Source: Iphione sp. A-MEVVRFRX5
Taxonomy: Eukaryota
Direction of reading: 5' to 3'
NCBI GenBank assembly: GCA_976226885.1
Contig: OZ320319.1
Coordinates: 33,666,001 to 33,730,000 of the forward strand
DNA length: 64,000 bases
Below are positions 13,186 to 43,243 of this stretch, piece by piece. A program made the position numbers and the translations under genes. Below the pieces are notes generated by a model. The model was not told the origin of the DNA. It did not search any database and saw only the letters and a list, made by a program, of their open reading frames with translations. The stretch's first letter is position 1; the number at the start of each line of letters is the position of its first letter.

Positions 13186-14337
13186 TCAGTCACTTAGGCT
13201 GGAAATGCCGGTGAGGAAGTTCGTGTCGCTGTGCATGATGCCGCGGCACCGGTGGCAGCACAGGATGCGCGTGAAGGCGCGCCGGAAGGTTCGGTTGAAG
13301 AAATAGTAGAGGAAAGGGTTGATGGTCGAGTTGATGTAGCCAAGCCAGAGCACCATCTGCCAGGCGGTGAAAGGGATGCGGTAACCGATGATCGGGTCAA
13401 TGACGTTGAAGATGAAGAAAGGACACCAGCAGGTCGAGTAGGTGCCCATGATGATGGAGAGCGTCTTGGCCGCTTTCCGTTCGTGTCGCATGCTCTTCTC
13501 GCGCTTCTGCTCGCCCAGGGTGGTCATCTCCAGGCTGCGGATGCGCATGGCCTGCCGTGTGGCCTCCTGATAGATGCGCACGTTGACCATGAGCATGAAG
13601 AGAGTCGGCACGTAGAAGATGACCAGCGAGCCGATGAGAGCGAACGGGATGTTGACCAGGAACATGCACGCCTTGCCGTCGGGCGGCGTGTGGCATTTGA
13701 TGACGTCGTCGATGCCGATCTCGTTCCAGCCGTTGAAGATGGGGATCCAGGAGATGAAGACGGGAATGGTCCAGCAGCAGAAGATGAGAACAAACACCGT
13801 GCGCCGCGTCATGATTTGGTGGTAAAAGAACGGGCAGCAGATGGCGATGTAGCGATCCATGGCTAGGCAAGACAGGTGCAGGATCGACGTCGACGTCATC
13901 ATGACGTCGAGACAAGACGCCAGCTTGCAGACGATGCTGCCCAGCTCCCAGTGTAGGTTGACGTGTAGGTTGTAAATGCCGAACGGCATAACGAGCAGCG
14001 CCACGAAGATGTCCGCCACGGCCAGCGACAAGATAAAATAGTTAGTGAGCGTGCGCATCTGGCGGAACATGGACACTGAGCAGATTACGACAGAGTTGCC
14101 GAAGACGGTTAACAGTACAATGAGGCTCAGCACAAACACAATGGCCGACGATTCCCCAGGGGAGTAGTTTATGGGCGGCCCGCTGGCGGCCGCGTTGACT
14201 GCGCCGGACGAGTCTACCGACGCCGGGCAGGGAGCGCTTCCGTTGGCCACCACTTCGTCGGCGGCTGCGCTCGGTTTGTGGATGAGCGTATGACCCATGG
14301 CGGCTGCAACGACAGCTGCAGATTCTTTATAGCTCAT
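13186..14337 (-). CDS. HTR4: Class A aminergic GPCR, 5-HT4 serotonin receptor-like (383 aa, single coding exon)
   Basis: Seven hydrophobic segments, TM1 GN, TM2 LAVAD, TM3 Asp (CLDVMMTS), DRY, CWCPFF and NSTINPFLY. ECL2-TM5 (GWNEIGIDD...CMFLVNIPFA) and TM6-7 (KAAKTLSIIMG...DPIIGY...LWLGYINS...FRRAF..ILCC) closely follow vertebrate 5-HT4 as I recall it. Confidence 0.9.
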   Translation of the reverse strand: MSYKESAAVVAAAMGHTLIHKPSAAADEVVANGSAPCPASVDSSGAVNAAASGPPINYSPGESSAIVFVLSLIVLLTVFGNSVVICSVSMFRQMRTLTNYFILSLAVADIFVALLVMPFGIYNLHVNLHWELGSIVCKLASCLDVMMTSTSILHLSCLAMDRYIAICCPFFYHQIMTRRTVFVLIFCCWTIPVFISWIPIFNGWNEIGIDDVIKCHTPPDGKACMFLVNIPFALIGSLVIFYVPTLFMLMVNVRIYQEATRQAMRIRSLEMTTLGEQKREKSMRHERKAAKTLSIIMGTYSTCWCPFFIFNVIDPIIGYRIPFTAWQMVLWLGYINSTINPFLYYFFNRTFRRAFTRILCCHRCRGIMHSDTNFLTGISSLSD

Positions 14338-19460: not shown

Positions 19461-19466
19461 ATTTAC
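19461..19466. repeat. Left 6-bp target-site duplication ATTTAC
   Basis: ATTTAC directly precedes AGTAGTGTATG (19467) and recurs directly after ...CACTACT (43237). Confidence 0.95.
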
Positions 19467-19557
19467 AGTAGTGTATGAAGGTAACTGCCCTAGACCCCCT
19501 TTAGTGCAAAAAGGTTATTTGGGTGCAAACCACTTGAGTTTCCCTGAACCACTTGAG
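19467..19557 (+). repeat. Left terminal inverted repeat
   Basis: The first 49 nt are the exact reverse complement of 43189-43237, and 71 nt match with 3 mismatches. It then continues GTTTCCCTGAACCACTTGAG, matching the right end after a 63-bp offset. Confidence 0.93.
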
Positions 19558-19582
19558 TTTCCATTTTCAACTTGACCTACAT

Positions 19583-19695
19583 AGATAAGGAGATAGATCA
19601 CGTCATGATAAGGGTTGTCCCTACTTATAGATAAGAGAGATCACGTCATGATAAGAACAGTGCGCTACTTGACTTTTCAAATGATAAGAGATAAG
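19583..19695 (+). promoter_or_regulatory. Subterminal cluster of GATA and CRE/ATF-like motifs
   Basis: Six WGATAAG copies, plus the direct repeat AGATCACGTCATGATAAG at 19595-19612 and 19638-19655. Confidence 0.5.
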
Positions 19696-19714
19696 AGCGC
19701 GCGCGCGCGAACCC

Positions 19715-19716
<2 letters not shown>

Positions 19717-19768
<52 letters not shown>
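19717..19768 (+). repeat. (GA)26 microsatellite inside the Polinton left end
   Basis: Uninterrupted GA run following a (GC)n stretch. Confidence 0.95.
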
Positions 19769-19773
<5 letters not shown>

Positions 19774-20967
19774 TCTGCTGTGTGTGGAGGGGGCCTTATT
19801 CTTTGTTTAATTTTCGAGCCCTTTTGCAGAGCTCTCCAAAAATTCCTGAATCCGGAAATGAATGGCTAAGAAAGAAAGGACTTACCTTGGTAAGGAAATC
19901 CATAACTTTCATCGAGGATATCTTGCGATACGACTCGTAGCTTGCGAAGATTGACACTTATGTGTAGAAATTAGTTGACATCAGTGGGTGTCTTTATGAT
20001 GGAGCAAGTACAAATGATAGATTATATGATTGAAGTTGAATGGAATTGATTTCAGATAGTACAGCGGCTTGGTTAATGAAGATAATAGGCTAATTTCATC
20101 CTGCTTATCATAGGGTCAAAGCTTTTAGATGGATGATGTTACGCGTATAGTAATTACAAGTCTGATTTTTCTTGACTTATGAGGATGGAGCGCTGTCAAG
20201 GCGTAATGCGGGATGCAGAGGAACTAACCCGAGAAATAATTGGTAGAAGAAATTGATCTTAACACATGCGAAGGTCTTTGCATTTATCAACATCCTGTTT
20301 TATGTAACTATATTTTATTTGTTTGATTGTTGGATCCCTAAAAGGGATCCAGCCAAAAATTATTATTCCTGAGTTGGCAGCAGCTCTCGTCGAGATGTCA
20401 CCATTTATTAAAACGGTACTCATCCACTTAAGCGAGCTTGATATTGAAACTAATGATGCGTAAATGGTGTTTCCTTCGGGTGTTTGTTGACATGTTGACT
20501 CTAATGATAAAACTTAGGACTTTGCTCCATGAAAACTATCCGCTGTTCTTACAGTCGAGTGAAATGATCCATTGTAATCTCAGGATGTGTGTAATAAAGA
20601 TGACTTAAAGCTATGTTTCGAGTAGATACATGAAGAATCTCGTCCGACGTAAATAGAACATCAGACGCCATCTTTTGTGAAAGAAAAACAATGCAGATGC
20701 CCTCTGGTGAGAATGAGATAGTTCTCGTGGCTTGGACTTTTGTTTCTTTTATATGTATGTCTAAATTGAAATGTACTCTTCTGTGTAATACTGTATCACT
20801 GATCATGTTGATGATAATGAAAAAAATAAAAGAAGTTGCTCTTCGAATAAATGTTGAGCGGAAGAATTATTAGTCTCCCAGAATGCAATCCATTCGGTCC
20901 CATATTGCGTCTTTGATTGCTATACACGGTACATTACTTGTTCACATTAACCAAAAAACCACTGAGA

Positions 20968-21714
20968 ATGCTTGAAGAAGAATCAACTACCCCCTCGTTT
21001 GATTTAGATGACCATTATTTTGTATCCGCCCTCGATACCAAAAGACATGGGATTAAGAATAGACCGTTTATCTATCTCCGTCACAAAGAAGAGCTTATTC
21101 CAGATATTCCGATGAGATTGGAAGATGTTTTTGATGAAGACTGCTCGTCTGTCAACATCAACCCCCTCGTTGCTCCCCAAGGTGATGACATGTCGGCTCA
21201 GTTCGAAGCACTATCCCATAGATTGATGGACATTTGTCGTCTGTTTTCATATAGTATCCGATTAGTCCGGGAATCACTATTTAAAAATGAACTTTCCCTC
21301 CTGAATATCTCAGCCTTACGTCTCGTGGAGGACATGTGGAATGACACGGTTGAAAAGTCTCGGTCAACCCATTCCGGATTAGAAAGAGGTCTGAGTGTTA
21401 TGGATATAGTGGAAAAGAATATCGAATCCCTGAACATCCCTACAGAATTGAAAGCAGTGATAAAAGAGAATATTTGCAGGAAACGACTGAACCACTTTAA
21501 GTATTGCTTCATAGACGTTGCATTCAGGATGACATGGAATGTGAAATACGAGGAAGAAATTAATGAAAAATTGAAATCAGGTATGGTAGCATTTGCAATA
21601 TGCAGGTTATTCATTTCGTGTAAGTGCGTGTTCCGACCTGTTTGCTTGCAGTGTTATGTGTTCAAACAAGTTGTAACTTGTTCGATAGATAAAACGGTTC
21701 GTCTTCAGATATGA
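20968..21714 (+). CDS. Polinton accessory protein A, unknown function, possible BC-box/Cul-box-like motifs
   Basis: ORF 20917-21714 with first ATG at 20968. A donor GTAAGT at 21620 and acceptor TTTCAG at 21876 would end the protein LFISY* instead of the unspliced tail. Confidence 0.65.
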   Translation: MLEEESTTPSFDLDDHYFVSALDTKRHGIKNRPFIYLRHKEELIPDIPMRLEDVFDEDCSSVNINPLVAPQGDDMSAQFEALSHRLMDICRLFSYSIRLVRESLFKNELSLLNISALRLVEDMWNDTVEKSRSTHSGLERGLSVMDIVEKNIESLNIPTELKAVIKENICRKRLNHFKYCFIDVAFRMTWNVKYEEEINEKLKSGMVAFAICRLFISCKCVFRPVCLQCYVFKQVVTCSIDKTVRLQI

Positions 21715-21965
21715 TAAAGCTGACGTCAGATAGTTATCAAGGGTTCATTAGATAAGATAACAATTGTGTGCGTGTATACAAGTAGATGATAACGAAATAG
21801 ACGTGTTCAGACTTGTTAAGTTTATCAGCTGAAATAAGAAACCCTGAAACAAAGTTTTATTTTGGGTTTGTTTCAGATTAGGTGGGATGAGTGCTTACGT
21901 CATAGCACAGTGTATATAAGATACCTTACAGAGACGTCGTGGGTTCATTCGGCAGCTCTGCAGAC

Positions 21966-23135
21966 ATGGAGACCATATCCGAGCGAGTTCGTGTATGCGA
22001 TGGAGGAGTGCATCTCCATCTGGAAATTCGTAGAATAGGGAAAGCGACTCGTCATCTATCAGTCCGACGCGAGGTCTTTGACACTGCCGGCAATGGATGG
22101 GAGACTCTTCTTTGTGGTCACGTTCTCACTGTTCAACCTGAAGAAAAGACCTACCACATTGAGCTTGCTGACTTTGCCAGCAGGACATATGTGTGCTTTG
22201 AACGGATCGACGAAGCAGCACAAAGAATAAAGTAAGTCTCTTTTCCTCAAATATATTAACTCTTTAACCATAAAGTTGGTTTGTGAACTCCCTGCTTAAC
22301 AATTTTTATATATAAATGTCTGTCATTCAATCCATTCCGATTTTGTAATTGAATGTTTCCATGTAATAAAAAAAAATCGAATATTATATCCATGTGTATT
22401 GTCTCTTTTTCCCCCAGCTACGACTGCTTCAATCTCCTGATCTACGAAGTCGAAGGAATATTGGATTATATGAAGAGGAATCCAATAGACTCGAGCAATT
22501 CATTCCTTGCTCTGGCCGAACGAGAGCGTGAGCGGACCAAGAAGGATGTTGGTTTTCCTTTGCTAAGGAGAACATACAATATGGTGAGACCAAAAGCAGA
22601 TGGCAGCCAATTCACCCGTCGGGCCGAGAACATCTTCATCAATCAGCTGATCTGTGAAGACACCGCCCAAAAAGAACTCATCGACGGGGAGAATATCGAG
22701 TACGTTCCCTTTCCTGCCAATACCATTTCAATGCATGAAGTCATCCAGAAGACGTATGTGTTTCTTCTTGCCACCGAATATCACAACTTGTTGAAAGCAA
22801 GAGGACTTGCCGACCTGGAGACTGATGATGGAGGCTCGCCCTGTCGTATCCCTGAGCATGCCCGTTCTGATGTGATGCATGCCGCCCACATCCGCATCAG
22901 CTTCCAATGACTAGTGGAGACCAGCCAGATGATGATCAATCTTCTGGAGTTGAGTAACGAGGTGAACCATTCACCTCCTACGATTGAATGCTTGAGAGAC
23001 TTCAATGAGAAAGACCATGCTAGTAAAGTCGATCGCATTCTCTGTGGACGTGTCATTAAGAATGGGGAGCTTGACACAGAGCACTACCACATGTATCATT
23101 TCGAGTACGAGTTTTGCTTGTTGGCTCAGATATGA
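21966..23135 (+). CDS. Polinton accessory protein B, two exons (21966-22231, 22418-22910), with possible readthrough to 23135
   Basis: TATA GTATATAAGA at 21912 and ATG in context GACATGG. The intron 22232-22417 (GTAAGT...CTTTTTCCCCCAG) joins ORFs 21939-22235 and 22353-22910 in frame, giving 252 aa. The same frame continues past TGA to 23135 (327 aa). Confidence 0.75.
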
Positions 23136-23587
23136 TAACCTTTTTTTTGTTTGATGCAGCCCGTTAAAGAAAATCTTAGTAATACTTAAATTTGTTTTGC
23201 TATGAGAAGTATGTATTATTATTAGAAGTAGAAGTAATAGCAATATGTTCTAGTTGACATATGTAAATCTATTGATTACATTGAGATTTGTCCATCCCGT
23301 ATAATAGAGTACTAAGACTTTGGTATATAATAAAGGGAAATCACATCATGTAACAATAGGATATGGTAATAAAAAAAATCTTTTTATTAAAACCGAACTG
23401 GTCACCTTTTTCTTTTTTACTTAAAAAAACACCAACTCAATCACGACTACAGTGTCCATCACATTCACTTCTAGAATACAGATGGAAATATGAAGTAATC
23501 ATCACCCGTTTGGTATAGTATAATTACATGATAGCAAACATGAATACTGTTACTACAGTCAAAGTGTCACTGAAAAGAAAAAAAAAA

Positions 23588-23946
23588 ACATAGCCGACAC
23601 TTAATCATCTCCTTCCTGTGTAGTATAATACGTGTCGCTATAACATCTTTAAATAGATCATATTCTCCAAAAAACGTATACAAAATGAAATGATCTATTA
23701 CATACTATAAAAAAAAATCATCACCTGGATGTAGTTTCTTGTATTTGGTTATATATATATATATAGAGAGAGAACATAGACGACATATAATCAGCACCTG
23801 CCTGTGTAGTAAAATCTTTGCCGCTATAACATCCTTAAATAGATCATCATATCCAACAAAGTACAAAATATGATGTTATCTAATATATAATATACCAAAC
23901 CATCACCTGGATGTAGTTTTCTTTCTGTGTTTTGATATATATATAT
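23588..23946. repeat. Diverged tandem duplication, period about 182-186 bp
   Basis: GCTATAACATC(T/C)TTAAATAGATCAT at 23637 and 23823; CATCACCTGGATGTAGTTT at 23719 and 23901; a partial third copy AATCAGCACCTG near 24021. Confidence 0.8.
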
Positions 23947-24431
23947 GTATGTATCTTTCAATAAAAGCGAACGGTTCAACCGGAATATAAGATATAAGCA
24001 TGCATTAAGAACGAGTTACTAATCAGCACCTGTGGTTTGTAAATATTTCTTCATCATACCATACTATTATATATGCATGTATATAAGTAAACTTATCTCA
24101 CTTTGTTTCATATATCGGGATACAATGCTAGACTAGAAAAATTTTTGCTTTCATATATCTTTCTTTTTTCTATAATAAAATGATCTGTTCCCTCTATTTA
24201 TCTCACGTCCTAAAATGACGTACCAAACTTGGTCATAAAATAGTGTTCAGATCTTTTTTTTTTTGAGGTCGTTCGTATCACACAGTACTAGTGTACAATC
24301 ATAAAAAATAATATAAAAAAAAAACACAATTACTTTCTGTCAAGTAACAAATGTATAACTTCCTCCGAGTAAATATACATGATGAGAGCCTCCAACTTTT
24401 TCTATTTTTTTTCTAAAGCAGCTCAGCTCTG

Positions 24432-24640
24432 ATAGTCGGCAGCATTTTAAAAAAAAAACGTGTTTCTCACACCAAGGCCTACTTCTTCTGGAATATGCAT
24501 ATTAACATCGATACTGGGCAGTATTTGAAAATGTGTTTCTCAGTCCAAGCTGTACATGTTCTTGAATGATAGACGACATTTAAAAAAAAAATGTTTTATA
24601 GAAAGTATTGTCTCACGCCAAGTGATAGATCTTCATTCAC
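24432..24640. repeat. Three diverged units with a 73-bp period
   Basis: TCTCAnnCCAAG at 24465, 24538 and 24611, each preceded by an ATTT-(A)n segment. Confidence 0.6.
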
Positions 24641-24715
24641 ATCCTGTTGTTCTTGGTTCACAATGGAGGAGCCTTCATATTCCACTGCAACCATCGTCAA
24701 TGCCACGTTACCGAG

Positions 24716-34158: not shown

Positions 34159-37100
34159 TCATAACTCCATCTCTCTCGCGCGTTCTCTGTCACGAAGCTC
34201 CTCCCACAGCTGCCCTAGACGATTCTCTCCCCTGAATTCCGAGGGTGAGGATATCTTAGCAAGAGCCGGCGTCATTCCCACCCCCCAGAAACGATCCGAG
34301 TCGGCAAAGACTATACGTCGATCGTGATCCAGTTCTCTCTTCGCTTCCGCCACCCTGTTCAATTTCAGTGTCAGAACTTGTCTCATCGTGTCCTCTCTCC
34401 CGATATGTCTCCACCTTTCACTCAGATCCACAAAGTCGGCATAGGCTCTCATTTCTGTGTGATCTCGAGTGAGATGAATGGCTCTGGCTTCTTCTTCCGC
34501 ATTGTGAAATCTAGCCAATTCGTAAAGGAACATGTGCTCTGAGGAGATGAACCCTAGCCCCATATCGCAAACGTAATGCGGACCGAGTACGTCTCTTGTC
34601 CCGACACCGAATACGTAATTGTCGACGTCGTCACTCCACGGACACAGGGTGATGGAGAGGGGGGTGGTGTGTATGCCATCATCGTGAACCACTCGTTTGG
34701 CATAGAAATACGAGAATCCCGTCCTTTCCTGCTTGTAGGTGAAGACGGTGTCGTCGACGGCGCGCATCCCCATATTGACTCCAATGCGTGACTTTTGGGT
34801 GCTGAGAACCGAGCGGTAGATTTCCATGAGTTGGACGAGACGAGATTTGGAAATGCCTTTACAGCTCAGCTTGTAGTTGTCTGTAGACGTCTCCAGAATG
34901 TAGGTTTTGCTGTTGAGGGCAACGATCCCTTCTCCTCGAGCCTCCTCTTTCATGATGCCTGGTACCCGTCTGTCGTACGTCTGGTGCTGTGGACAGCACT
35001 CGCGCATGAACCAGACGGGCTTGGTAGAATCACTGCAATTGCCTAACACTTCGTCCAGATAGAGTTTTCTCTTCTCCTCGGACATGGCTTCGGGTAGATT
35101 GGAGGACGACAGAGCTAGATAGGCACTGTCCGTGTCCATGGTAACGTATTCGAAATGGTCCCTGTCGATCAGTTTATCGATGCAATCGTAATAGAAACCC
35201 AACATCGTTAATTTGGCATATTGAAGGATGAAGAAACCCAAATAGATCGGAAGGTCTAGGACGATGCGGGGCTTGGCTGCTTGGATTTCGTAGAATCCTT
35301 TGTACTCCACCATCTTCCTGAAAGAAGGAGAGTTGACAGCTAACGATGCCTCGCACTTGTCGGAGAAATAATTGATGGCAGTCTGCTTCTCCTTCTGCAT
35401 GATGATGCCACCATATGCAGAATTACCCAGGAGTTTCATGGTGTCTGCTATGACTGCCATGTCGGGGTTGGCATCGCCTCGTCTACGGGCTGCCGTGATT
35501 TCTTGTTCAAAGTCACTGAAACAGGTGGACGAGTTGAATTCGATCACCTGGTAGACGTTAGTCACCCTCAATCCATGCTCCAGGTACCATTTCAGGAGTG
35601 GGGTGGCGATGAGGGTTTTCTTAGCCCTCATTGCCCCTACCAAAAGCTGACGAGGACGTTCCGACAACTCGAACTGAGCCACGTGTCTTTGCATGTGTGA
35701 ACCGATATCACAGGTACGAACGCTAGCTTTGCCAAAGAGAGGGGACATCTCTTCGAAATAACTCCATGGCGGGAGACTCTTCTCTTTTCCCTCACTCCAG
35801 GCTTCTGGAACTTCTATGTCCACTTCGACTGCTCCGAAAAGGTCACCTTTTTCTACAGCTCTAAGGATTTCCTGCCCACTTATCTTACCATATCGAACTC
35901 TGGAGAACGGGGGGAGAAGAATGTCTCTGGCTATGCTCTGCAATTCCTCTTTGCCGTCCATGATTTTTCTGAAAGAACACTCTGTCATCGTGACTACCCT
36001 ATAGTCCATCCACTCCAGAAAAGTTTTCTTCTGTTCCGTTCTCTTCTGTCGCTTTCTTCTGTCCTGTTCGTTCATTTTCCCCTTCATGCAACGATGACCG
36101 TGAAAGAAGCAACCGTTGAATTCGAATACCGTGCCACGGCTTGGGTTGTTTCCTTTCCCAGCAGTAGAGGGAGACATGAATCCGTCGACCTGATACGGTC
36201 CGATGCGTAACTCACCTCCGTCTCGGTTCTTGGCGTGATGAATGGTTTTCTTCCTTCTTCGCGACTCCCATTCCAACCACACGAACATGGTCTGGTACGT
36301 AGAGAATTTCTCGACCACAAAGCCATACTCCTGCCTTCGTCGTGTGAAGTTGCCCATCGGCATCTCTTTGGCTATGGCCGAGAGATATAGACTGTTGGCA
36401 TCGAGTCCCAGAATGGACTTGCAGGGTGACAATCCATCTCGAATGAGAGTCTTGTCCTTCTCGTGATATCTGGTGAAGACGATGGCTGGACCACCCACCA
36501 GATTACTCTTGAAGGTCTTGTATATATCTTCCTGAGAACCATTGAACAAGGGAAACACGGTTCCCTTAGAGGAGGCAGACTGGAACAGCATTCGTCGAGC
36601 CATGCCCGGAGCAGATACGGATATTTTGAACAAGTCGAAACCCCGCTGGAAATAGAAAGCCTGCAACTTTTCCACTGCCTCGACGAACGGGAGCACGTCT
36701 AGGTTGTTATAATAAATCAGAAGGTCTGCCAGACACTGCATGTTCTCTTTCCTCCATACTTCTTGGAGGCTTTCGTAATCAGCGATGGAAATGTTACTTC
36801 CTTTCAAGCTAGAGTAGAATGCCTCGTGTGGAGGAAGCTCTGTCTCCTTCAACTTCTCGGGGCAGTCAAGGTACTCGTAGCAGAAGAAACTCTTTTCTTG
36901 AGAAGCACCGTACGCCTTAAGAAAGCGAGCATAGGACACACCAGGCGACAGATACTGACATATGTCCAGGAACTTGAAGCGTACAGTGGAAATGGAGATG
37001 TACGTGTTCTCTCGCTTGATCACAAATGAACCTGGTTCGTCCACCTGGAGGGCTCTCAAGAGTTCCCCCTTCAGTAAGTTCAGGTCGTAGCGGGCAGAAT

Positions 37101-39641
37101 TGAAACCCAAGACGGGTAGCGAACTCATGTAGGCATAGAACCTACCTTGTATTTTTTCTACCGTCTTCTTATACTTCAGGGCAGGGTGGGTCCGATCCCC
37201 CTCCTGGCGCTGACCACCTCTGTCATCTTCATCATCGGCATCATCATCATCGTTAGCACCACCAGCAGCATTGGCAGCATCATCGTTGCCGGCAGCATCC
37301 GCATCATCGTCGACATTCTCTTCGTCCTCACGATGCAAGACGAAATCGACCAGTTCGTCGTCTTCGACGACATGATCTTGAACGGGTGCATCTCCCAACT
37401 GTCTCGTTATTTTGTCGTTTGTCTCCTGCAGTAGTTCCTCCAGTTGACTGACCACGTCGCCCCATTTTCGTTTTGCTCTCTCTAGAGCTTCTTCCTGAAT
37501 AGATTCCAGGTATTCGAGCATCTGATTAACTAGCGTTTTCATGTCTTCGTGTAGGAAACACTGAGGATTTGTGAAACCAGGTACGTTGCTGCACACGGAG
37601 ACTGAGATGGTCTCGTGTCGATGAATCCACGTCACACTAGGGGTGTCTCTTTCTCCATCGAGTCTTCTGAGAATAGCCTCACAGTCAAATACGGCGAAAT
37701 CTTCATAAGTCCGTTCCTCAGGGGAAACGACTATTCCCAGTCCTTCCAGATCATCGAATATGGTGGAAGGACTGTTGTAGTATCCCCCTCGGTACACATA
37801 ACGTGTTCTCAGGGGACATACTTTGGAGTGCCTCGCAAAGTGATGTCTCTTGCCGAAACATCGTCGACAGAGACGGCACTGAAACTTCTTGGCGTATGTC
37901 TCGAAGTCATTGACATAAGAGAGGTGACCTGCATGAAGGTTAAGGTGCATAATGTCAGGAAAACGAGAGAAAGGTTTCCTAATGACGGATATGCTTCCAT
38001 TCATCTTCAATTCGTATACATAGATGCCGACTTGGAAACATTCCTCAAAGAGAGTCAAGTCGCGCAGGTCCACACCCCTAGATTTACTGGGGTCGGGAGG
38101 TAGTGTGCGGTTTCCTAGACTTGATTGGAACTGACGCCATGACAAATAGTACTCTTTCACGGCTCCTTCTACGTCGTTTTCTTGATGGTGTACTGCGAGA
38201 CACCTAAAGGCGCAAAGAGCATCGTTATGATCATCTAATGAAGTGATACATCGTTTATTTCGCACAAACTCGGGAAGGAAACCTCGACCCATCAGATACG
38301 TGGTGCGCGTAATGAAAAATACGACATTGGTTATCATGGCTACCTGCCACTTAGTGTCTGGTCGGTTCCGGGTGAAGTAATTCTCCGGGTCCACTGCCCT
38401 TATGGTGTCCATTACCTCAGACAGGTCACTTGCCCGGGAAACCACTATGGGTTCGTTAAATACCATACTGTTACTATAGGGGATGAAATAACGATATTCA
38501 CCCGTCTGAACATTACGCAATATCATACCGAACGACATATTCACCTTGAAGGTATGGTCTTCTCTTTCGAAAATGGTCTCCAAGAATTGGTGAAGTTCCT
38601 GGGGACCACGTGACAGATCGTTGGTGGGGAAATTGTAATCGGTGGTGATTTCTCTATCTGTATGGTGGGCCAGGATGTGGCGCTGATTGGCTCTATATAC
38701 CCTTTCCAGTTCTGGCTCTATGGTCTCCCCTTCCCTGTTGCACCAGGGTGGATGCTGATTGTTCTCGCTTGGGGTCTTGTCCCTTTTTCTTTTTTTACTT
38801 TTGTCCTTCTTTCCTCGCTCACCATCCTTCCACGGTTCGACCTGGAGGGGTATACCCTCTTCATGGAGTGTGGTTCCATTCCCTCCGCCCCCGTGTTGGA
38901 TTCCTCGATGTAGATACAACTCGCGCTTATTCTCGAACGAATCTCCACATTTTCTACATCGCCATTCTAATCGGTGTGAGTGACTTAGAAGATGCCTTCG
39001 CATAAGTGAAGCTTTCTTAAAAGACCGGGTACACTTAGAGCACTTGTATTGCTGACAGCTTTCTTTGTGTCGCCTGGCATTGCCTTGACGCTTAAATTTC
39101 TTCAAGCACTTCTCACATTGCCTTTGTTTTACAACCTGTATTTAAAAAACAATCGAAGTAAGTTATCTTCATGGTACTTTGTTTTCTTATAGGAACTTCA
39201 TACGACGAGTATATGACAAAAAACAGATTGCAGTATGCTGGCTCGCAGTAAACAGGTAAGGAAACACAAATACACAGGTTTTTTACTTACTTCTTCTATC
39301 TCGTCAGATGAGGGTGATGATGACAGGGAATATAGACTCTGCATTTCTTCTCTTGGAAGTACTCTCACCAATCCTTCTTCTGGCTGTTTATTTTTCACAT
39401 AGAGAGAGAGAGAGAGACAGAACAAAATAGGATAACTGACTGCATCCAAACATGCACACACTCTCACGCGTATGGAAATTGATACATTTTCTATCATTAT
39501 TTCAGTCGAACAGCTCATTCAACTCACTGGTCGGCGACTTGGCCCCGGAATAGACTCATATCGGACAGATGCTACATCGGACGACACTGCAACTGATGCT
39601 GGAGGAGAAGTTGTGGTTGTTCTTGCTGGTGGTGGTGCTGC

Positions 39642-39673
<32 letters not shown>

Positions 39674-40210
39674 AATGTTGGGTGATTTCATCAGCCGTAC
39701 GATCATCTTGAGAAGTCTATACAAGGAATACATGTACATGATGTGATGCACAAATCCAAAGATTAGAAAACTCAGTTCTACTAAACCATACCAAAGAAAA
39801 AAAAAAAAAAAAAAAACTTTACTTACGTCTTGATCAGTCTTCGAATGAAAACTAACATCCTGTTTGCTTGGTGTGAAGACATTATCCGAGGAATGAGATT
39901 GCTGGGTTTGTGAAGGCATGGATGTTGGTAGCAATAAATTATTCAATAGATCCACCTGCAATGATTTGTGAATTATATAAATGTATATACAGTATAGTAA
40001 TCAATTGTTAAATTATCCATTAGTACAGTAGAACGTTTTTTGGGGACTTACCTCACTACTGTTCAAATGATTGCTTCTTAATTCATTTTGTCTCTCCAAT
40101 ACGATGGGATTATTCATCAATCCCTTCGCTGCAGCCCATGAGATGAGTTCCTCCTCGGATGAGAAAGAAGCTACAAGTCTCCTCAATAGGTCAACTGCAG
40201 CTTGAGCCAT
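34159..40210 (-). CDS. POLB: Protein-primed DNA polymerase B polyprotein, five exons (40210-40052, 39955-39827, 39716-39528, 39383-39291, 39135-34159), about 1848 aa
   Basis: ExoI VFDCE, ExoII FNSARYD, ExoIII YNNLDV; Pol motifs DANSLY, KLLGNSAYG and MDTDS. All four introns are GT(A/G)AGT...AG and phase 0. Also three N-terminal zinc fingers, an OTU-like Cys/His pair, a Vsr-like insert and a NADAR-like C-terminus. An in-frame ATG at 40222 would give 1852 aa. Confidence 0.92.
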
Positions 40211-40246
40211 GGTGGAGAACATTAAGTTAGCTATTGATAGTACACC

Positions 40247-40252
40247 TTTATA
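40247..40252 (-). promoter_or_regulatory. TATA box of the spliced PolB gene
   Basis: Minus-strand GTATATAAAG, about 37 nt before ACCATGG at 40210. Confidence 0.6.
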
Positions 40253-40562
40253 TACCTAGCCTGTATCATGAATATGTTAATAATAATGCTGACATCACTG
40301 TCACATAATGTGATCACATGTCCGTGATGTGGTGCAATAATTGAAAAGAAAAAAGGTCAAATTGAAATGCTAAATGTTTATTCGATGATTGTGATCAGAT
40401 TCATGAATAAGAGTTACATATTTAAAATAAACAAAAAATTCATTAAAGGAATTAATGGTTCATTTACTATCTTCCAAAAACAACCTAAAAAATATATCCC
40501 AGGTCGCTTCAAGGGCAAATACAGTCGAGGACGAGGATAATCTCTGAGATGTCTCAATATGT

Positions 40563-41647
40563 TTAGTTACAGTGGCAGGCAGCGCTATCATCCTTTGTCT
40601 GTCAAAAAAGAAATATAAAAAAAATAATTTCATTATTGCTTTCAAATTTGTCACTGAAGATTATCATAATTCAACAACAAAGAAATTAATATAATACACT
40701 AATTTCTCTTCTAGTCGTTGCATTTTTTTTATATTCATTTAACATCTTACCTTGTCTTTTTTCTTCTCATTCTCTCTCTCCAATTTGTCAATAACTCGAT
40801 CCACTTGTGCCTCTGTCATCCCATACCAGTCGCAGTAGTTTTGGGATTGTCCTTCCTGACCGAAGTTCTTCACCTGACCTTGGTTGTTTTTTAGAATGTT
40901 TTCACTTAGAAAAACCTTCAATGTCGAAGGGAGAGGGAGCCGTTGGATCTTTTCGTGGGTCCTTTTCTTCAGGTTGGAGTCTTCCACCAGACGAACCAGA
41001 TGAGAAGGGGAAAATACAGAATGATCATTGATTTCATCATCATCATCATCATCATCGGCATCTCTAACATCTCCTTCCATCAGATTCGCATCACCATTCC
41101 TATTAGTTTCTTGGATAACTGCTACGAAATCACCCATTTGTTCATATATGGCATGTTCATCGGTATCTTCGAGCACACCGTCTTCGTTTTCGATCATAAA
41201 CTCGATGGTGGGTTTGGATAGACTGTGCCATATGCTTCCTACGACTGCATTACCCGCTTGAGTTAGTAAACTGAGTTTGCCGTCAAACAGGATGCTCCTC
41301 AAAGCAAGCATGCTGGACTTGAACAGACGATACACCTCCAATGGACGACGTTTCAGTTCATATATCTCGTCAGTAATCACCATTGCATGATCAGAAAGAT
41401 CCATCACACATAAAGCACAGAGAGAATCACCCCGTTTCACCACTTGACGTCCCATTGGGGCGGGTCCGAGTATGTCCTTCATATGTACTTCGTTCTTTTC
41501 CCAATTCCAGTAATAGTCACTCATGTATAATACTACTGGACGATGTACTTCGTTCTTTTCGTGAATATATAGTTCAGGAAAATGCCGATTCCCATGCAGA
41601 TGTGGATCATAAGAACGAATTATGTATTTGCCAGCTATATCCATCAT
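40563..41647 (-). CDS. Polinton accessory SOCS-box protein (41647-40751, probable second exon 40598-40563)
   Basis: 302-aa ORF containing FSPSHLVRL...KIQRLPLPSTLKVFL after an acidic tract. Donor AAG/GTAAGA at 40750 and acceptor TTTTTTGACAG at 40599 would replace VRC* with TKDDSAACHCN*. Confidence 0.75.
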
Positions 41648-42426
41648 GTTTTAACAAAGGGGGTGAAGCTTCTGCGTCTAGTCCGGACTGAGGTTCAATA
41701 ACAAATGTAATGCTCCCAGAAAGATAGAGCTAGGGTTATATGATAACCCGAAACAGATTATAACAACCAAAAAAAAATTAAGTGTTATGTATGGACATTC
41801 TCAACCTTCGCTTAGTATTCTTCTGGGTATCATTGGTCTCAAGTATCTTTCAGTAAGGGTTTCAGGAAATGCATCCTTACATTCATCCAAACCAATTCAA
41901 ATCATTCCACACGATCAGGACAAAAGAAGCAAGGACTATATCTAGTGTAATATCTTCATCCCAGCGGTATGTACAGATAATGTAATCACTTGTAAACGTG
42001 TTCAGACATTTCAGTCAAGGACTTTATCAGTAATATCAAAATACAATAGTGTGAACTCTTCATATCGCCTCACCATCGTCAACGATAGGATAATGTGACG
42101 TCAGTTGCAAGGGAAATTTCTTTATCTAAAGATGGCTTAGAGCCTTTATCTTTTCTATAATAACCATATCCCATATGGTTTATATGTATTGTGAATCCAT
42201 TACATCCACCGCACACATACGCCATCTAGTGTAAAACCCAAGGTCGCGCGTCAGACGCTATAAAATGTCATCAGACGCCATCTGGATGAGCTCTCCCGAC
42301 TTGCATTTTTGCAAACTCTAAAAATCAAATAAAGACTTACCTAGTCGTCTCTTTTCCACACAACAAAGTTCATAGTGACTAGCATTCAGATACAATTATT
42401 TGAACTGACTCGCATCAACATAAATT

Positions 42427-42528
42427 AAAATGGTCACCGACACTAATTACAAACTCGTCCGCATACTTGGGGAATCGAACCGGGTATCTCTCGTTTCTCC
42501 AACCTATGCTTAATGAGAGTTTCTATAG
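42427..42528 (-). ncRNA. Candidate Pol III-type structured RNA, copy 1
   Basis: Perfect B box GGTTCGATTCC (42481-42471), A-box-like AGCATAGGTTGG, nested stems AAACTC/GAGTTT and GCATA/TATGC, ending GACCATTTT. Confidence 0.5.
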
Positions 42529-42725
42529 TGTCAGGACGATACGTCAGACGTTAACAACTGATGTCATGCACATTGGAGCCGGACAGACGTTTTTTCAGAC
42601 CCGAAATCGAGAATGAAACATTAACAGGTCATTCTTGAACACAGAACATTGCTCAGTCAAGGTGATATGAAGAAAGACTTATTTAAACTGCTTCAATTCC
42701 ACCTATAACACATATAAAATTGGAC

Positions 42726-42821
42726 AAAATGGTCGCACCCACTACACTGACTCTTCACACTCGGGAATCGATCCATCTTTCCAGTGGTTCGGTCGGCGAG
42801 TGCTGTAAGAGAGTCATTATA
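42726..42821 (-). ncRNA. Candidate Pol III-type structured RNA, copy 2
   Basis: B box GGATCGATTCC (42774-42764), stems GACTCT/AGAGTC and CACTCG/CGAGTG, ending GACCATTTT; homologous to copy 1. Confidence 0.45.
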
Positions 42822-42953
42822 ATGGGAGGACCTAATGATGTCCTTCAAATGGTATTGTCAATGCTTCCGCGCTCAAGGACATCGATGGGAAGCGCTTTCA
42901 TTCATACATATGCTTAACACTGATCGTGTCTAGAGTCGCTCCAACTTCAGGGC

Positions 42954-43080
42954 GCGGGAAATTTGAAATTATATCTTATCTCTACCTACTTATCTTTCAT
43001 AAGGGCGGGAAATTTGAAATGATATCTTATCTCAAGTAGAGGATCCATGCGCGGGAAATTTGAAATAATCTCTCTTATCT
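42954..43080. promoter_or_regulatory. Three E2F/CDE-CHR composite motifs interleaved with GATA motifs
   Basis: GCGGGAAATTTGAA at 42954, 43005 and 43051; CTTATCT at 42975, 42989, 43026 and 43074. Confidence 0.6.
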
Positions 43081-43083
43081 TTT

Positions 43084-43237
43084 CTCAAGTGGTTCAAGGA
43101 AACTCAAGTGGTTTATGACGATCTCAAGTACCTCTGTACTGACTTGACCTTCTCGAAAATCGAACTTCAAGTGGTTTGCACTCAGATGACCTTTTTGCAC
43201 TAAAGGGGGTCTAGGGCAGTTACCTTCATACACTACT
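43084..43237 (-). repeat. Right terminal inverted repeat
   Basis: Reverse complement of the left terminus; carries three TCAAGTGGTT copies (43085, 43104, 43167). Confidence 0.93.
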
Positions 43238-43243
43238 ATTTAC
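43238..43243. repeat. Right 6-bp target-site duplication ATTTAC
   Basis: Identical to 19461-19466. Confidence 0.95.

What the first reader, a model, noticed from the sequence alone, without database searches (positions are those of the whole stretch)
34159..34630. NADAR-like domain fused to the C-terminus of the viral DNA polymerase
After the polymerase ends, the last ~155 aa read LGPHY...FISSEHMFLY..A.F...A..I...W...M..VL..K...IVFADSDRFWGVG...FRGENRLGQLWEELR. This follows the NADAR/YbiA pattern (SxEH, W..M, DxxWGxG, GxNxLG..L..R). Established: NADAR enzymes are N-glycosidases, and DarT1-associated and phage NADARs remove ADP-ribose from guanine in DNA; guanine ADP-ribosylating toxins (pierisin, clam CARP-1) exist in animals. 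Inference: the polymerase carries its own eraser for a host DNA ADP-ribosylation defence, acting on displaced ssDNA during strand-displacement replication. The SEH Glu and DxxWG Asp are kept, but the usual EAS Glu is Phe, so activity may be altered or binding-only.
Basis: partly seen in the sequence, partly recalled or inferred. Interest (0 to 1): 0.9.

Follow-up and report, generated by a model that had tools for sequence, protein, structure and literature searches.

The report
Degenerate NADAR domain on Maverick polymerase
The DNA polymerase of an intact virus-like transposon (Maverick/Polinton) in an animal genome really does end in a NADAR-fold domain, and a whole clade of such polymerases in marine invertebrates shares it, but this copy lacks two of the three residues known to be needed to remove ADP-ribose from DNA.

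Summary
The last 159 residues (window 34162-34638, minus strand) of an uninterrupted 1648-aa ORF are a NADAR domain. Pfam PF08719 scores 46-51 bits against a cut-off of 35.1. The AlphaFold2 model has pLDDT 96, and its best PDB matches are the Phytophthora NADAR-ADP-ribose complex and E. coli YbiA (TM about 0.75).

The rest of the ORF is a protein-primed B-family polymerase. It lies in a 23.8-kb Maverick/Polinton with 76-nt terminal inverted repeats, a perfect 6-bp target-site duplication, an rve-chromo integrase, an A32-like ATPase and an adenain-like protease.

The fusion is not unique. Of the 120 closest polymerase relatives, 42 carry a NADAR or shortened NADAR tail and 70 stop exactly where the polymerase ends. 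NADAR presence is clustered on the polymerase tree. The named relatives come from bivalves, abalone, sea cucumbers and a starfish.

The "eraser" reading is only partly supported. Of the three residues shown by mutagenesis to matter, this copy keeps the first Glu, but the Lys is Leu and the last-strand Glu is Phe. Only 3 of 65 fused domains keep all three, against 70 of 111 free NADAR domains, while the fold-defining residues stay conserved.

My best reading is an inherited, active-site-eroded NADAR module that binds a ligand or plays a structural role. I found no paper describing the fusion.

The parts
34162..34638 (-). NADAR-fold domain (residues 1490-1648 of the polymerase ORF). E43-equivalent, D130-equivalent and W133-equivalent are kept. 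The K50-equivalent is Leu and the E125-equivalent is Phe.
   Evidence: Pfam PF08719 at 46-51 bits; AF2 pLDDT 96; Foldseek 8bau and 2b3w at TM about 0.75; column counts
34159..34161 (-). Stop codon of the polymerase-NADAR ORF
34639..39105 (-). Protein-primed B-family DNA polymerase part (residues 1-1489). It has N-terminal C2H2 zinc fingers, an acidic low-complexity stretch, and exonuclease and polymerase motifs. The start codon was not resolved: the ORF list begins at a TTG under table 11.
   Evidence: Translation; end-to-end relatives at 30-55% identity, several of which hit PF03175 DNA_pol_B_2; the top three Foldseek hits of the C-terminal-half model are phi29 polymerase, which is weak evidence
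19467..43237 (.). Whole Maverick/Polinton-like element, 23,771 bp. GC is higher in its gene-dense part (about 26-40 kb, roughly 44-52%) than in most of the surrounding sequence.
   Evidence: Inverted repeat I1, alignment of the ends, GC profile
19467..19542 (+). Left terminal inverted repeat (76 nt, 93% complementary to the right arm)
43162..43237 (-). Right terminal inverted repeat
19461..19466 (+). Left copy of the 6-bp target-site duplication ATTTAC
43238..43243 (+). Right copy of the 6-bp target-site duplication ATTTAC
33483..34118 (-). Putative A32/FtsK-like packaging ATPase (all Pfam hits are weak and below cut-off)
31475..32632 (-). rve integrase with a C-terminal chromodomain
   Evidence: PF00665 at 35.4 bits and PF00385 at 35.7 bits, both above cut-off
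28898..29395 (-). Putative adenain-like cysteine protease (Peptidase_C5, 17.9 bits, below cut-off)

Best explanation
The C-terminal 159 residues are a genuine NADAR-fold domain. It was acquired once or a few times by a lineage of Maverick/Polinton protein-primed polymerases of marine invertebrates, and it has been inherited together with the polymerase ever since. A linker of only about six residues joins it to the end of the polymerase. In this copy and in its whole subclade the fold and part of the ADP-ribose phosphate-binding cleft are kept (E34, W76, R81, D115, W118). Two of the three residues shown to be needed for guanine-ADP-ribose hydrolysis are gone (Lys to Leu, last-strand Glu to Phe). 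I therefore think it most likely works as a non-catalytic or strongly re-tooled module that rides on the replicase. It could bind an ADP-ribose-like or nucleotide ligand, or a partner, or simply brace the polymerase C-terminus. I do not think it is a canonical DNA de-ADP-ribosylase here. Shown: fold, fusion, boundary, clade distribution and residue pattern. Inferred: loss of canonical catalysis, a binding or structural role, and an ancestral active enzyme that belonged to the NAD+/ADP-ribose host-virus conflict.
For: Fold and family.

In-frame fusion shared by relatives: about 50 cluster representatives align through both the polymerase and the NADAR domain. 42 of the 120 nearest polymerases have a NADAR or shortened NADAR tail by profile.

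Inheritance with the polymerase: NADAR presence needs 6 parsimony changes on the polymerase tree, against a mean of 34 and a minimum of 26 in 500 shuffles.

Active-site erosion is specific. At 8 ligand or catalytic columns the top-residue share is 0.49 in fused domains and 0.78 in free ones, while the overall shares are 0.39 and 0.42. W76, K92, G121, G137, N139 and G142 stay at 86% or more.

The E43, K50 and E125 equivalents are all present in 3 of 65 fused domains against 70 of 111 free ones.

In the window's own subclade (four nearest relatives) the E125-equivalent is Phe or Tyr in 5 of 5 and the E43-equivalent is Glu in 5 of 5. The state is therefore ancestral to the subclade and is not decay after insertion.

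A sister clade carries an about 125-aa shortened derivative (hhalign 98.3%), which fits progressive loss of enzyme features.

The need for these residues comes from mutagenesis in PMC11543638.

Ancestral link to ADP-ribose biology: four fused members, all known only from incomplete polymerase fragments, keep an acid or His at the E125-equivalent. One sister polymerase carries DUF4326 in the same slot, and DUF4326 and NADAR occur together in one free protein (PMC9503650).
Against: No activity or binding was measured. NADAR subfamilies are known to move the last-strand catalytic residue (Asp two positions away in DarT1-associated NADARs, His in phage NADARs; PMC11543638, PMC11125620), so a re-tooled active site cannot be excluded. 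D113 lies close to the lost Glu in this copy. Residues at the former catalytic columns are conserved within subclades (for example His plus Val in one, Glu plus Phe/Tyr in the window's), which could reflect subclade-specific chemistry rather than loss. I could not inspect model coordinates, so the state of the pocket is not known. The domain evolves faster than the polymerase core (30-42% against 51-55% identity to the nearest four relatives). That could also mean an arms-race interface.
Confidence: 0.5

Rival explanations
1. One reading: the domain is an active glycohydrolase that removes ADP-ribose from guanine in the element's DNA during replication, and so counters a host DNA ADP-ribosylating defence.
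For: True NADAR fold, closest to the ADP-ribose-bound P. nicotianae enzyme. E34, W76, R81, D115 and W118 are kept. The domain is tethered to a DNA polymerase. Guanine-N2 DNA ADP-ribosylation is documented in clams (PMC11209040), and relatives of this polymerase sit in bivalve genomes. Four fused members keep an acid or His at the last-strand position, and three of them keep all three residues. NADARs from different subfamilies all hydrolyse guanine-ADPr in vitro (PMC11125620).
Against: The K50-equivalent is Leu and the E125-equivalent is Phe in this copy. The corresponding mutants of E. coli C7 NADAR lose efficient hydrolysis or rescue (PMC11543638). 62 of 64 fused domains lack the last-strand Glu. 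The otherwise conserved N-terminal Ser-Asn positions are also changed. No ART gene was seen among ORFs of 100 aa or more in the element.
Confidence: 0.15
2. The domain is an N-glycosidase with a different substrate or a re-tooled active site. It might act on free ADP-ribose derivatives, NAD-derived signals or damaged nucleotides near the replication fork.
For: NADARs also cleave riboflavin-pathway N-glycosides and are predicted to process low-molecular-weight ADPr derivatives (PMC9503650). There is a weak TIGR02464 match. Alternative residues are conserved within subclades at the former catalytic columns. DUF4326 occupies the same slot in P0155; it is predicted to process ribose-linked phosphates and is also fused to family-A polymerases, once together with a uracil-DNA glycosylase domain.
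Against: No single alternative acid or base is conserved across the fused clade. The phosphate-binding Lys is lost in this copy.
Confidence: 0.2
3. The domain is a functionless remnant that merely survives as part of the polymerase ORF.
For: Active-site erosion. Faster divergence than the polymerase core. Shortened derivatives in a sister clade. 70 of 120 relatives manage without any tail.
Against: The frame stays open and the fold-defining residues are kept at 86-97% across polymerases that have diverged to about 40% identity in the core. The AF2 model is very confident. Overall column conservation equals that of free NADARs.
Confidence: 0.12
4. The fusion is an artefact: a separate downstream gene or a host exon joined to the polymerase by chance or by ORF calling.
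For: None beyond the general caution that ORFs were called with a bacterial table.
Against: The frame is continuous, with a linker of only about six residues. The same architecture occurs in dozens of independent relatives. NADAR-less relatives stop exactly at the junction.
Confidence: 0.02

Closest known systems
YbiA-type stand-alone NADARs (P. nicotianae NADAR, PDB 8bau; E. coli YbiA, PDB 2b3w)
   Same: Same fold with no N-terminal extension (TM about 0.75). It shares the first Glu, the Trp and Arg of the phosphate cleft, the Asp-x-x-Trp-Gly motif and the Gly-x-Asn-x-x-Gly motif.
   Different: It is fused to a polymerase. The Lys (K50) and the family-defining last-strand Glu (E125) are replaced by Leu and Phe. 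The loop before the central Trp is two residues shorter.
DarT1-associated NADAR antitoxins (BC4488 family, G. lovleyi NADAR, PDB 8bat) and phage gp30.3-type NADARs
   Same: Same superfamily. Phage NADARs are the best BFVD matches (TM about 0.8).
   Different: Poor structural match to 8bat (TMq 0.42, E 8.2). No adjacent ART toxin gene. No Asp or His at the last-strand position in this copy.
NADAR domains embedded in replicase polyproteins of invertebrate RNA viruses (shrimp nidoviruses, bivalve/annelid picorna-like viruses; Iyer et al. 2022, PMC9503650)
   Same: A NADAR domain travels on the same polypeptide as the viral replicase in viruses of marine invertebrates. These domains appear among the BFVD matches.
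   Different: Those are RNA viruses with RdRp polyproteins. Here the carrier is a protein-primed DNA polymerase of a dsDNA Maverick/Polinton. That survey does not mention Polintons.
Maverick/Polinton (polintovirus, adintovirus-like) protein-primed polymerases without a tail
   Same: Polymerase core 39-48% identical. The same zinc-finger N-terminus occurs in many, and the element type is the same.
   Different: 70 of the 120 nearest relatives end at the polymerase C-terminus. One (P0155) carries DUF4326 instead of NADAR.
Multi-NADAR cellular proteins of animals (C. elegans SNA-3; Haliotis rufescens LOC124129589 with seven NADAR domains)
   Same: They show that animal NADAR domains occur in large proteins. 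For SNA-3 the role appears to be outside ADP-ribose removal (PMC11125620). The abalone protein is the top-scoring hit of the window's domain.
   Different: These are cellular genes, not linked to a polymerase. The best single-domain identity is only about 28%.

Membership tests
NADAR superfamily (Pfam PF08719) | Profile match above the curated gathering score | tested here: met
   46.3 and 51.1 bits against a cut-off of 35.1; profile positions 32-161 of 163
NADAR superfamily (Pfam PF08719) | [quoted passage not shown] | tested here: met
   AF2 pLDDT 96; Foldseek 8bau TMq 0.76 and 2b3w TMq 0.75, both prob 1.00
NADAR superfamily (catalytically competent members) | First catalytic Glu (E43 in P. 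nicotianae, E88 in E. coli C7) | tested here: met
   E34 of the domain; Glu in 102 of 111 free and 23 of 64 fused domains
NADAR superfamily (catalytically competent members) | Phosphate-coordinating Lys (K50 / K95) | tested here: not met
   Leu at domain position 41; Lys in 82 of 111 free and 26 of 64 fused domains; requirement from PMC11543638
YbiA subfamily of NADAR | Glu in the last beta-strand (E125). It is Asp in BC4488 NADARs and His in phage NADARs. | tested here: not met
   Phe at domain position 111; Glu in 94 of 111 free and 2 of 64 fused domains
NADAR superfamily | Asp-x-x-Trp-Gly and Gly-x-Asn-x-x-Gly motifs | tested here: met
   D115, W118, G119, G137, N139 and G142 are present
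NADAR superfamily | N-glycosidase / ADP-ribosyl-guanine hydrolase activity | not testable with these tools
   No biochemical data exist. The judgement on activity rests only on the residue pattern.
DarT1-NADAR toxin-antitoxin module | Adjacent DarT-type ADP-ribosyltransferase gene and an N-terminal fold extension | tested here: not met
   No ART family among Pfam hits of 17 ORFs in and around the element; 8bat TMq only 0.42
Maverick/Polinton element | Protein-primed B-family polymerase | tested here: met
   Exonuclease and polymerase motifs are visible in the translation (motif knowledge is my own). End-to-end relatives hit PF03175. The window protein itself has no direct PF03175 or PDB sequence hit. 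The Foldseek top hits are phi29 polymerase, but only weakly.
Maverick/Polinton element | Retroviral-type (rve) integrase | tested here: met
   PF00665 at 35.4 bits plus a chromodomain at 35.7 bits
Maverick/Polinton element | Terminal inverted repeats and a 5-6 bp target-site duplication | tested here: met
   76-nt arms at 93%; ATTTAC on both sides
Maverick/Polinton element | Packaging ATPase, adenain-like protease, double and single jelly-roll capsid genes | tested here: inconclusive
   The ATPase and protease have only sub-threshold Pfam hits. The capsid candidates (446-aa and 390-aa ORFs) have no hits and were not modelled.

The most novel reading that the evidence does not exclude
A lineage of Maverick/Polinton viruses of molluscs and echinoderms has placed NAD+/ADP-ribose-network domains (NADAR, and in one relative DUF4326) on the C-terminus of its replicative polymerase. 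At least the members that keep the full catalytic set would strip base-linked ADP-ribose from DNA at the replication fork. That would be a counter-measure to the pierisin/CARP-type DNA ADP-ribosyltransferases of these animals. The eroded versions, such as this one, would be later binding-only derivatives. It would be the first sign that DNA ADP-ribosylation acts as antiviral or anti-transposon immunity in animals.
Probability: 0.25. Interest if true: 0.85.

Novelty: new variant of a known kind. Interest (0 to 1): 0.55.

Why it matters
NADAR enzymes are the only known erasers of guanine ADP-ribosylation in DNA. Viral NADARs are known from phages, giant viruses and invertebrate RNA-virus polyproteins. 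Finding the domain welded to the replicative polymerase of dsDNA virus-like transposons gives a concrete handle on an open question: whether base ADP-ribosylation of DNA is used as defence in animals. The hosts are marine invertebrates, and bivalves among them are known to make guanine-specific DNA ADP-ribosyltransferases. The clade also offers a natural series, from a full catalytic set, through eroded forms, to shortened forms and to absence. That series can be read by sequence and structure alone to ask what a polymerase gains from such a module. For this particular copy the practical message is caution, because its residues argue against canonical activity.

Tried and rejected
1. Single-sequence phmmer of the last 180 aa against PDB sequences found nothing relevant. 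Only the profile of A2 and the fold search found the NADAR structures.

2. The word-indexed search restricted to residues 1480-1648 among long proteins returned nothing. This was a sensitivity limit, not absence: the index-free search found the fused relatives.

3. phmmer of the polymerase core against the PDB found no hit. The window protein has no direct PF03175 hit either. Polymerase identity therefore rests on motifs, on relatives and on weak phi29 fold hits.

4. I asked whether DUF4326 is a divergent NADAR. hhalign gave probability 0.2, so I rejected the idea.

5. I asked whether other polymerases of this family carry DUF4326. Only P0155 was found. P0274 carries DUF4326 but is unrelated to the window polymerase. 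The 'swappable slot' idea therefore rests on a single relative.

6. The two small ORFs upstream of the polymerase are not homologous to the N-termini of relatives. The start of the gene stays unresolved.

7. Literature searches pairing NADAR, DUF1768 or YbiA with Polinton, Maverick or adintovirus found no paper that holds both a domain term and an element term. The 'NADAR' hits were author names.

8. I did not look up or fetch DNA of related elements or of the window's own source contig, because they are virus-like elements of animals. The host species and dN/dS are therefore not determined.

9. I had no access to model coordinates, so I made no pocket or electrostatics analysis.
Full report
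WHAT IS THERE

Window 34159..39105 on the minus strand is one uninterrupted reading frame of 1648 codons plus a stop.

Pfam places a NADAR domain (PF08719) at residues 1514-1640. It scores 46.3 bits on the whole protein and 51.1 bits (E 2.4e-13) on the last 180 residues, against a curated cut-off of 35.1. NCBIfam's riboflavin-fusion NADAR model TIGR02464 gives 40 bits, which is below its cut-off.

I modelled residues 1490-1648 with an alignment of 60 relatives. The AlphaFold2 model has mean pLDDT 96 and pTM 0.89. Foldseek against the PDB finds exactly two significant matches:
- 8bau, the Phytophthora nicotianae NADAR bound to ADP-ribose (TMq 0.76);
- 2b3w, E. coli YbiA (TMq 0.75).

The DarT1-associated Geobacter NADAR (8bat) matches poorly (TMq 0.42, E 8.2). 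A profile of the same alignment hits the same two chains at E 2.9e-34 and 7.7e-27. Against predicted viral structures, the best matches are NADARs of phages and giant viruses, and NADAR domains inside replicase polyproteins of shrimp nidoviruses and other invertebrate RNA viruses.

WHERE THE DOMAIN STARTS, AND WHAT IT IS FUSED TO

Seventy of the 120 nearest polymerase relatives end within a few residues of window residue 1485-1490. The polymerase proper therefore ends there, and the NADAR domain is residues about 1490-1648 (window 34162-34638). The first NADAR strand begins only about six residues later.

The upstream part shows the exonuclease and polymerase motifs of protein-primed B-family polymerases in the translation (the motif knowledge is my own). 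It has no direct Pfam or PDB sequence hit. However, it aligns end to end at 30-55% identity with proteins that do hit PF03175 DNA_pol_B_2.

An AF2 model of residues 1100-1648 has pLDDT 88.8 and pTM 0.67, with lower confidence at the junction. Its three best PDB hits are phi29 DNA polymerase, but these are weak (best E 0.08).

The start codon of the gene is unresolved. The listed ORF begins at a TTG under the bacterial table, and the two small upstream ORFs are not homologous to the N-termini of relatives.

THE SURROUNDINGS

The gene sits in a 23,771-bp element at 19467-43237. The element has these features:
- It is bounded by 76-nt inverted repeats that are 93% complementary.
- It is flanked by a perfect 6-bp duplication, ATTTAC.
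- On the same strand lie an rve integrase with a chromodomain, both above Pfam cut-offs.
- On the same strand lie an A32-like ATPase and an adenain-like protease, both below cut-off.
- It contains several ORFs with no hits.
- The gene-dense part is richer in GC than most of the flanking sequence.

This is a Maverick/Polinton-type virus-like element. I saw no stops or frameshifts in the genes I examined. Outside the element there is an intronless rhodopsin-family GPCR gene (211.6 bits), so the host is an animal.

I did not try to identify the host by looking up the contig, because that would have fetched a provirus-like element of an animal. The named relatives of the polymerase come from bivalves (Pinctada, Tegillarca, Solemya, Argopecten, Pecten), an abalone, sea cucumbers and a starfish.

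THE FUSION IS A CLADE TRAIT

An index-free search of 1.84 billion cluster representatives with the last 180 residues found 244 proteins at E<=0.001. About 50 of the best 150 align with the window protein through both the polymerase and the NADAR domain. Seven of these are full-length proteins of 1532-1806 aa.

The 120 best polymerase-core relatives divide as follows:
- 26 have a NADAR tail detectable by single-sequence phmmer.
- 42 have one by a profile built from the hits. The profile was used for detection only.
- 70 have no tail.
- One (P0155) has DUF4326 at that position, at 70.6 bits.
- The remaining few have other or unassigned tails.

The four nearest relatives (51-55% identity in the core) all carry NADAR.

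On a neighbour-joining tree of the polymerase core, NADAR presence needs 6 parsimony changes. In 500 shuffles the mean was 34 and the minimum 26. A neighbouring clade has tails of about 125 aa that align with the fused NADAR profile at 98.3% hhalign probability, so these are shortened derivatives.

IS IT LIKELY TO BE ACTIVE?

Schuller et al. 2023 (PMC11543638) showed by structure and mutagenesis that E43, K50 and E125 of the P. nicotianae enzyme matter for guanine-ADP-ribose hydrolysis and for rescue from DarT1. These correspond to E88, K95 and D171 of E. coli C7 NADAR. K50, R79, W89, R93, W133 and D130 hold the pyrophosphate.

I mapped these residues through the HMMER alignment to 8bau (chain numbering is the paper's numbering plus two) and through a MAFFT alignment of 176 domains. 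The result for the window domain, with counts of domains keeping the canonical residue, is:

| P. nicotianae residue | Window domain | Free NADAR domains (of 111) | Fused NADAR domains (of 64) |
|---|---|---|---|
| E43 | E34 (kept) | 102 | 23 |
| K50 | L41 (lost) | 82 | 26 |
| E125 | F111 (lost) | 94 | 2 |
| W89 | W76 (kept) | 109 | 58 |
| R93 | R81 (kept) | 32 | 30 |
| D130 | D115 (kept) | 85 | 41 |
| W133 | W118 (kept) | 107 | 41 |

All three catalytic residues are present in 70 of 111 free domains and in 3 of 65 fused ones (the 64 relatives plus the window's own domain).

The loss is specific to the active site:
- The mean top-residue share over all columns is 0.39 in fused domains and 0.42 in free ones.
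- At eight ligand or catalytic columns it is 0.49 in fused domains and 0.78 in free ones.
- W76, K92, G121, G137, N139 and G142 stay at 86% or more in the fused set.

In the window's own subclade the last-strand position is Phe or Tyr in 5 of 5, and the first Glu is kept in 5 of 5. The state is therefore inherited and is not post-insertion decay.

The domain diverges faster than the polymerase core: 30-42% against 51-55% identity to the nearest four relatives. Four fused members, known only from incomplete polymerase fragments, keep Glu or His at the last-strand position.

CONTEXT FROM THE LITERATURE

- NADARs from several subfamilies hydrolyse guanine-ADP-ribose in vitro but differ in what they rescue in cells. 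NADARs occur in molluscs, echinoderms and other invertebrates (PMC11125620).
- Iyer et al. 2022 (PMC9503650) record NADAR domains in phages, giant viruses and replicase polyproteins of invertebrate RNA viruses. They describe DUF4326 as a rhodanese-phosphatase-type domain often fused to NADAR, Macro and SLOG, and they predict that it processes ribose-linked phosphates. They do not mention Polintons.
- I confirmed one free protein with both DUF4326 and NADAR (P0110). I also found DUF4326 on two family-A polymerases, one of which also has a uracil-DNA glycosylase domain.
- Guanine-N2 DNA ADP-ribosylating activity has been found in six edible clams (CARP-1; PMC11209040).
- No paper in the searchable library pairs NADAR, DUF1768 or YbiA with Polinton, Maverick or adintovirus.
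- The precomputed Pfam labels of the public proteins already show PF08719 on these polymerases. The architecture is therefore visible in databases, but I found no description of it.

INTERPRETATION

I rank the explanations as follows:
- About 0.5: an inherited NADAR-fold module whose canonical active site has been eroded. It acts as a binding or structural appendage of the polymerase.
- About 0.2: a re-tooled glycosidase that acts on another substrate.
- About 0.12: a functionless remnant.
- About 0.02: an artefact.

The clade-level idea is that the domain entered these elements as part of the ADP-ribose conflict with invertebrate hosts. The DUF4326 alternative and the few members that retain the last-strand residue make this plausible. 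It rests on thin evidence: one DUF4326 relative, and four members known only from incomplete polymerase fragments.

LIMITS AND SLIPS

- No related element DNA was fetched, so there is no nucleotide-level selection test and no host identification.
- The tree is a quick neighbour-joining tree.
- Only the best 120 of 638 polymerase relatives and the best 150 of 244 NADAR hits were examined.
- Two small slips in my reasoning. I glanced at the consensus line that the alignment tool printed when checking the spacing of the Lys. I also wrote out short NADAR and polymerase motif patterns from memory.

Noticed in passing
P0155 (relative of the window polymerase, 46% identity in the core), residues 1489-1569: A sister polymerase carries DUF4326 (PF14216, 70.6 bits) exactly where the window protein carries NADAR. 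DUF4326 and NADAR co-occur in the free protein P0110. DUF4326 is also fused to two family-A DNA polymerases (P0272, P0273), one of which also has a uracil-DNA glycosylase domain.
   Followed up: partly
window 35866-36228 (-), inside the polymerase between the polymerase motifs: An insert of about 120 residues gives a weak match to the end of the Vsr mismatch endonuclease profile (PF03852, E 0.16, 12.3 bits). JGI names one relative (P0180) as a very-short-patch repair endonuclease. This may be a nuclease-like insertion in this polymerase family.
   Followed up: partly
window 13186-14337 (-): An intronless 383-aa rhodopsin-family GPCR gene (PF00001, 211.6 bits) lies in a GC-richer patch about 5 kb from the element. 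It shows that the host is an animal.
   Followed up: partly
window 19528-19575, the following about 200 bases, and the mirror region inside the right end: Short subterminal direct repeats lie just inside both terminal inverted repeats: a 19-nt unit in 2.5 copies, plus a repeated motif of about 26 nt visible in the end alignment. They may be binding sites for the integrase or the replication machinery.
   Followed up: no
P0001 (Haliotis rufescens LOC124129589, 4240 aa): This abalone cellular protein has seven NADAR domains (841.6 bits summed). It is the top-scoring hit of the window's NADAR domain, so molluscs have large multi-NADAR proteins of unknown role.
   Followed up: partly
window 40739-41647 (-), inside the element: A 302-aa ORF has a weak SOCS-box match (E 0.0078, below cut-off). 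If real, it would be a host-like ubiquitin-ligase adaptor motif in a cargo gene of the element.
   Followed up: no
window 23587-23950: A 186-nt tandem duplication (2 copies, 78% matches) lies in the ORF-poor left part of the element.
   Followed up: no
window 37224-37309 (-), polymerase residues about 600-630: An acidic low-complexity stretch (Asp/Ala/Gly-rich, 18-nt repeat) separates the N-terminal zinc-finger region from the polymerase core.
   Followed up: no
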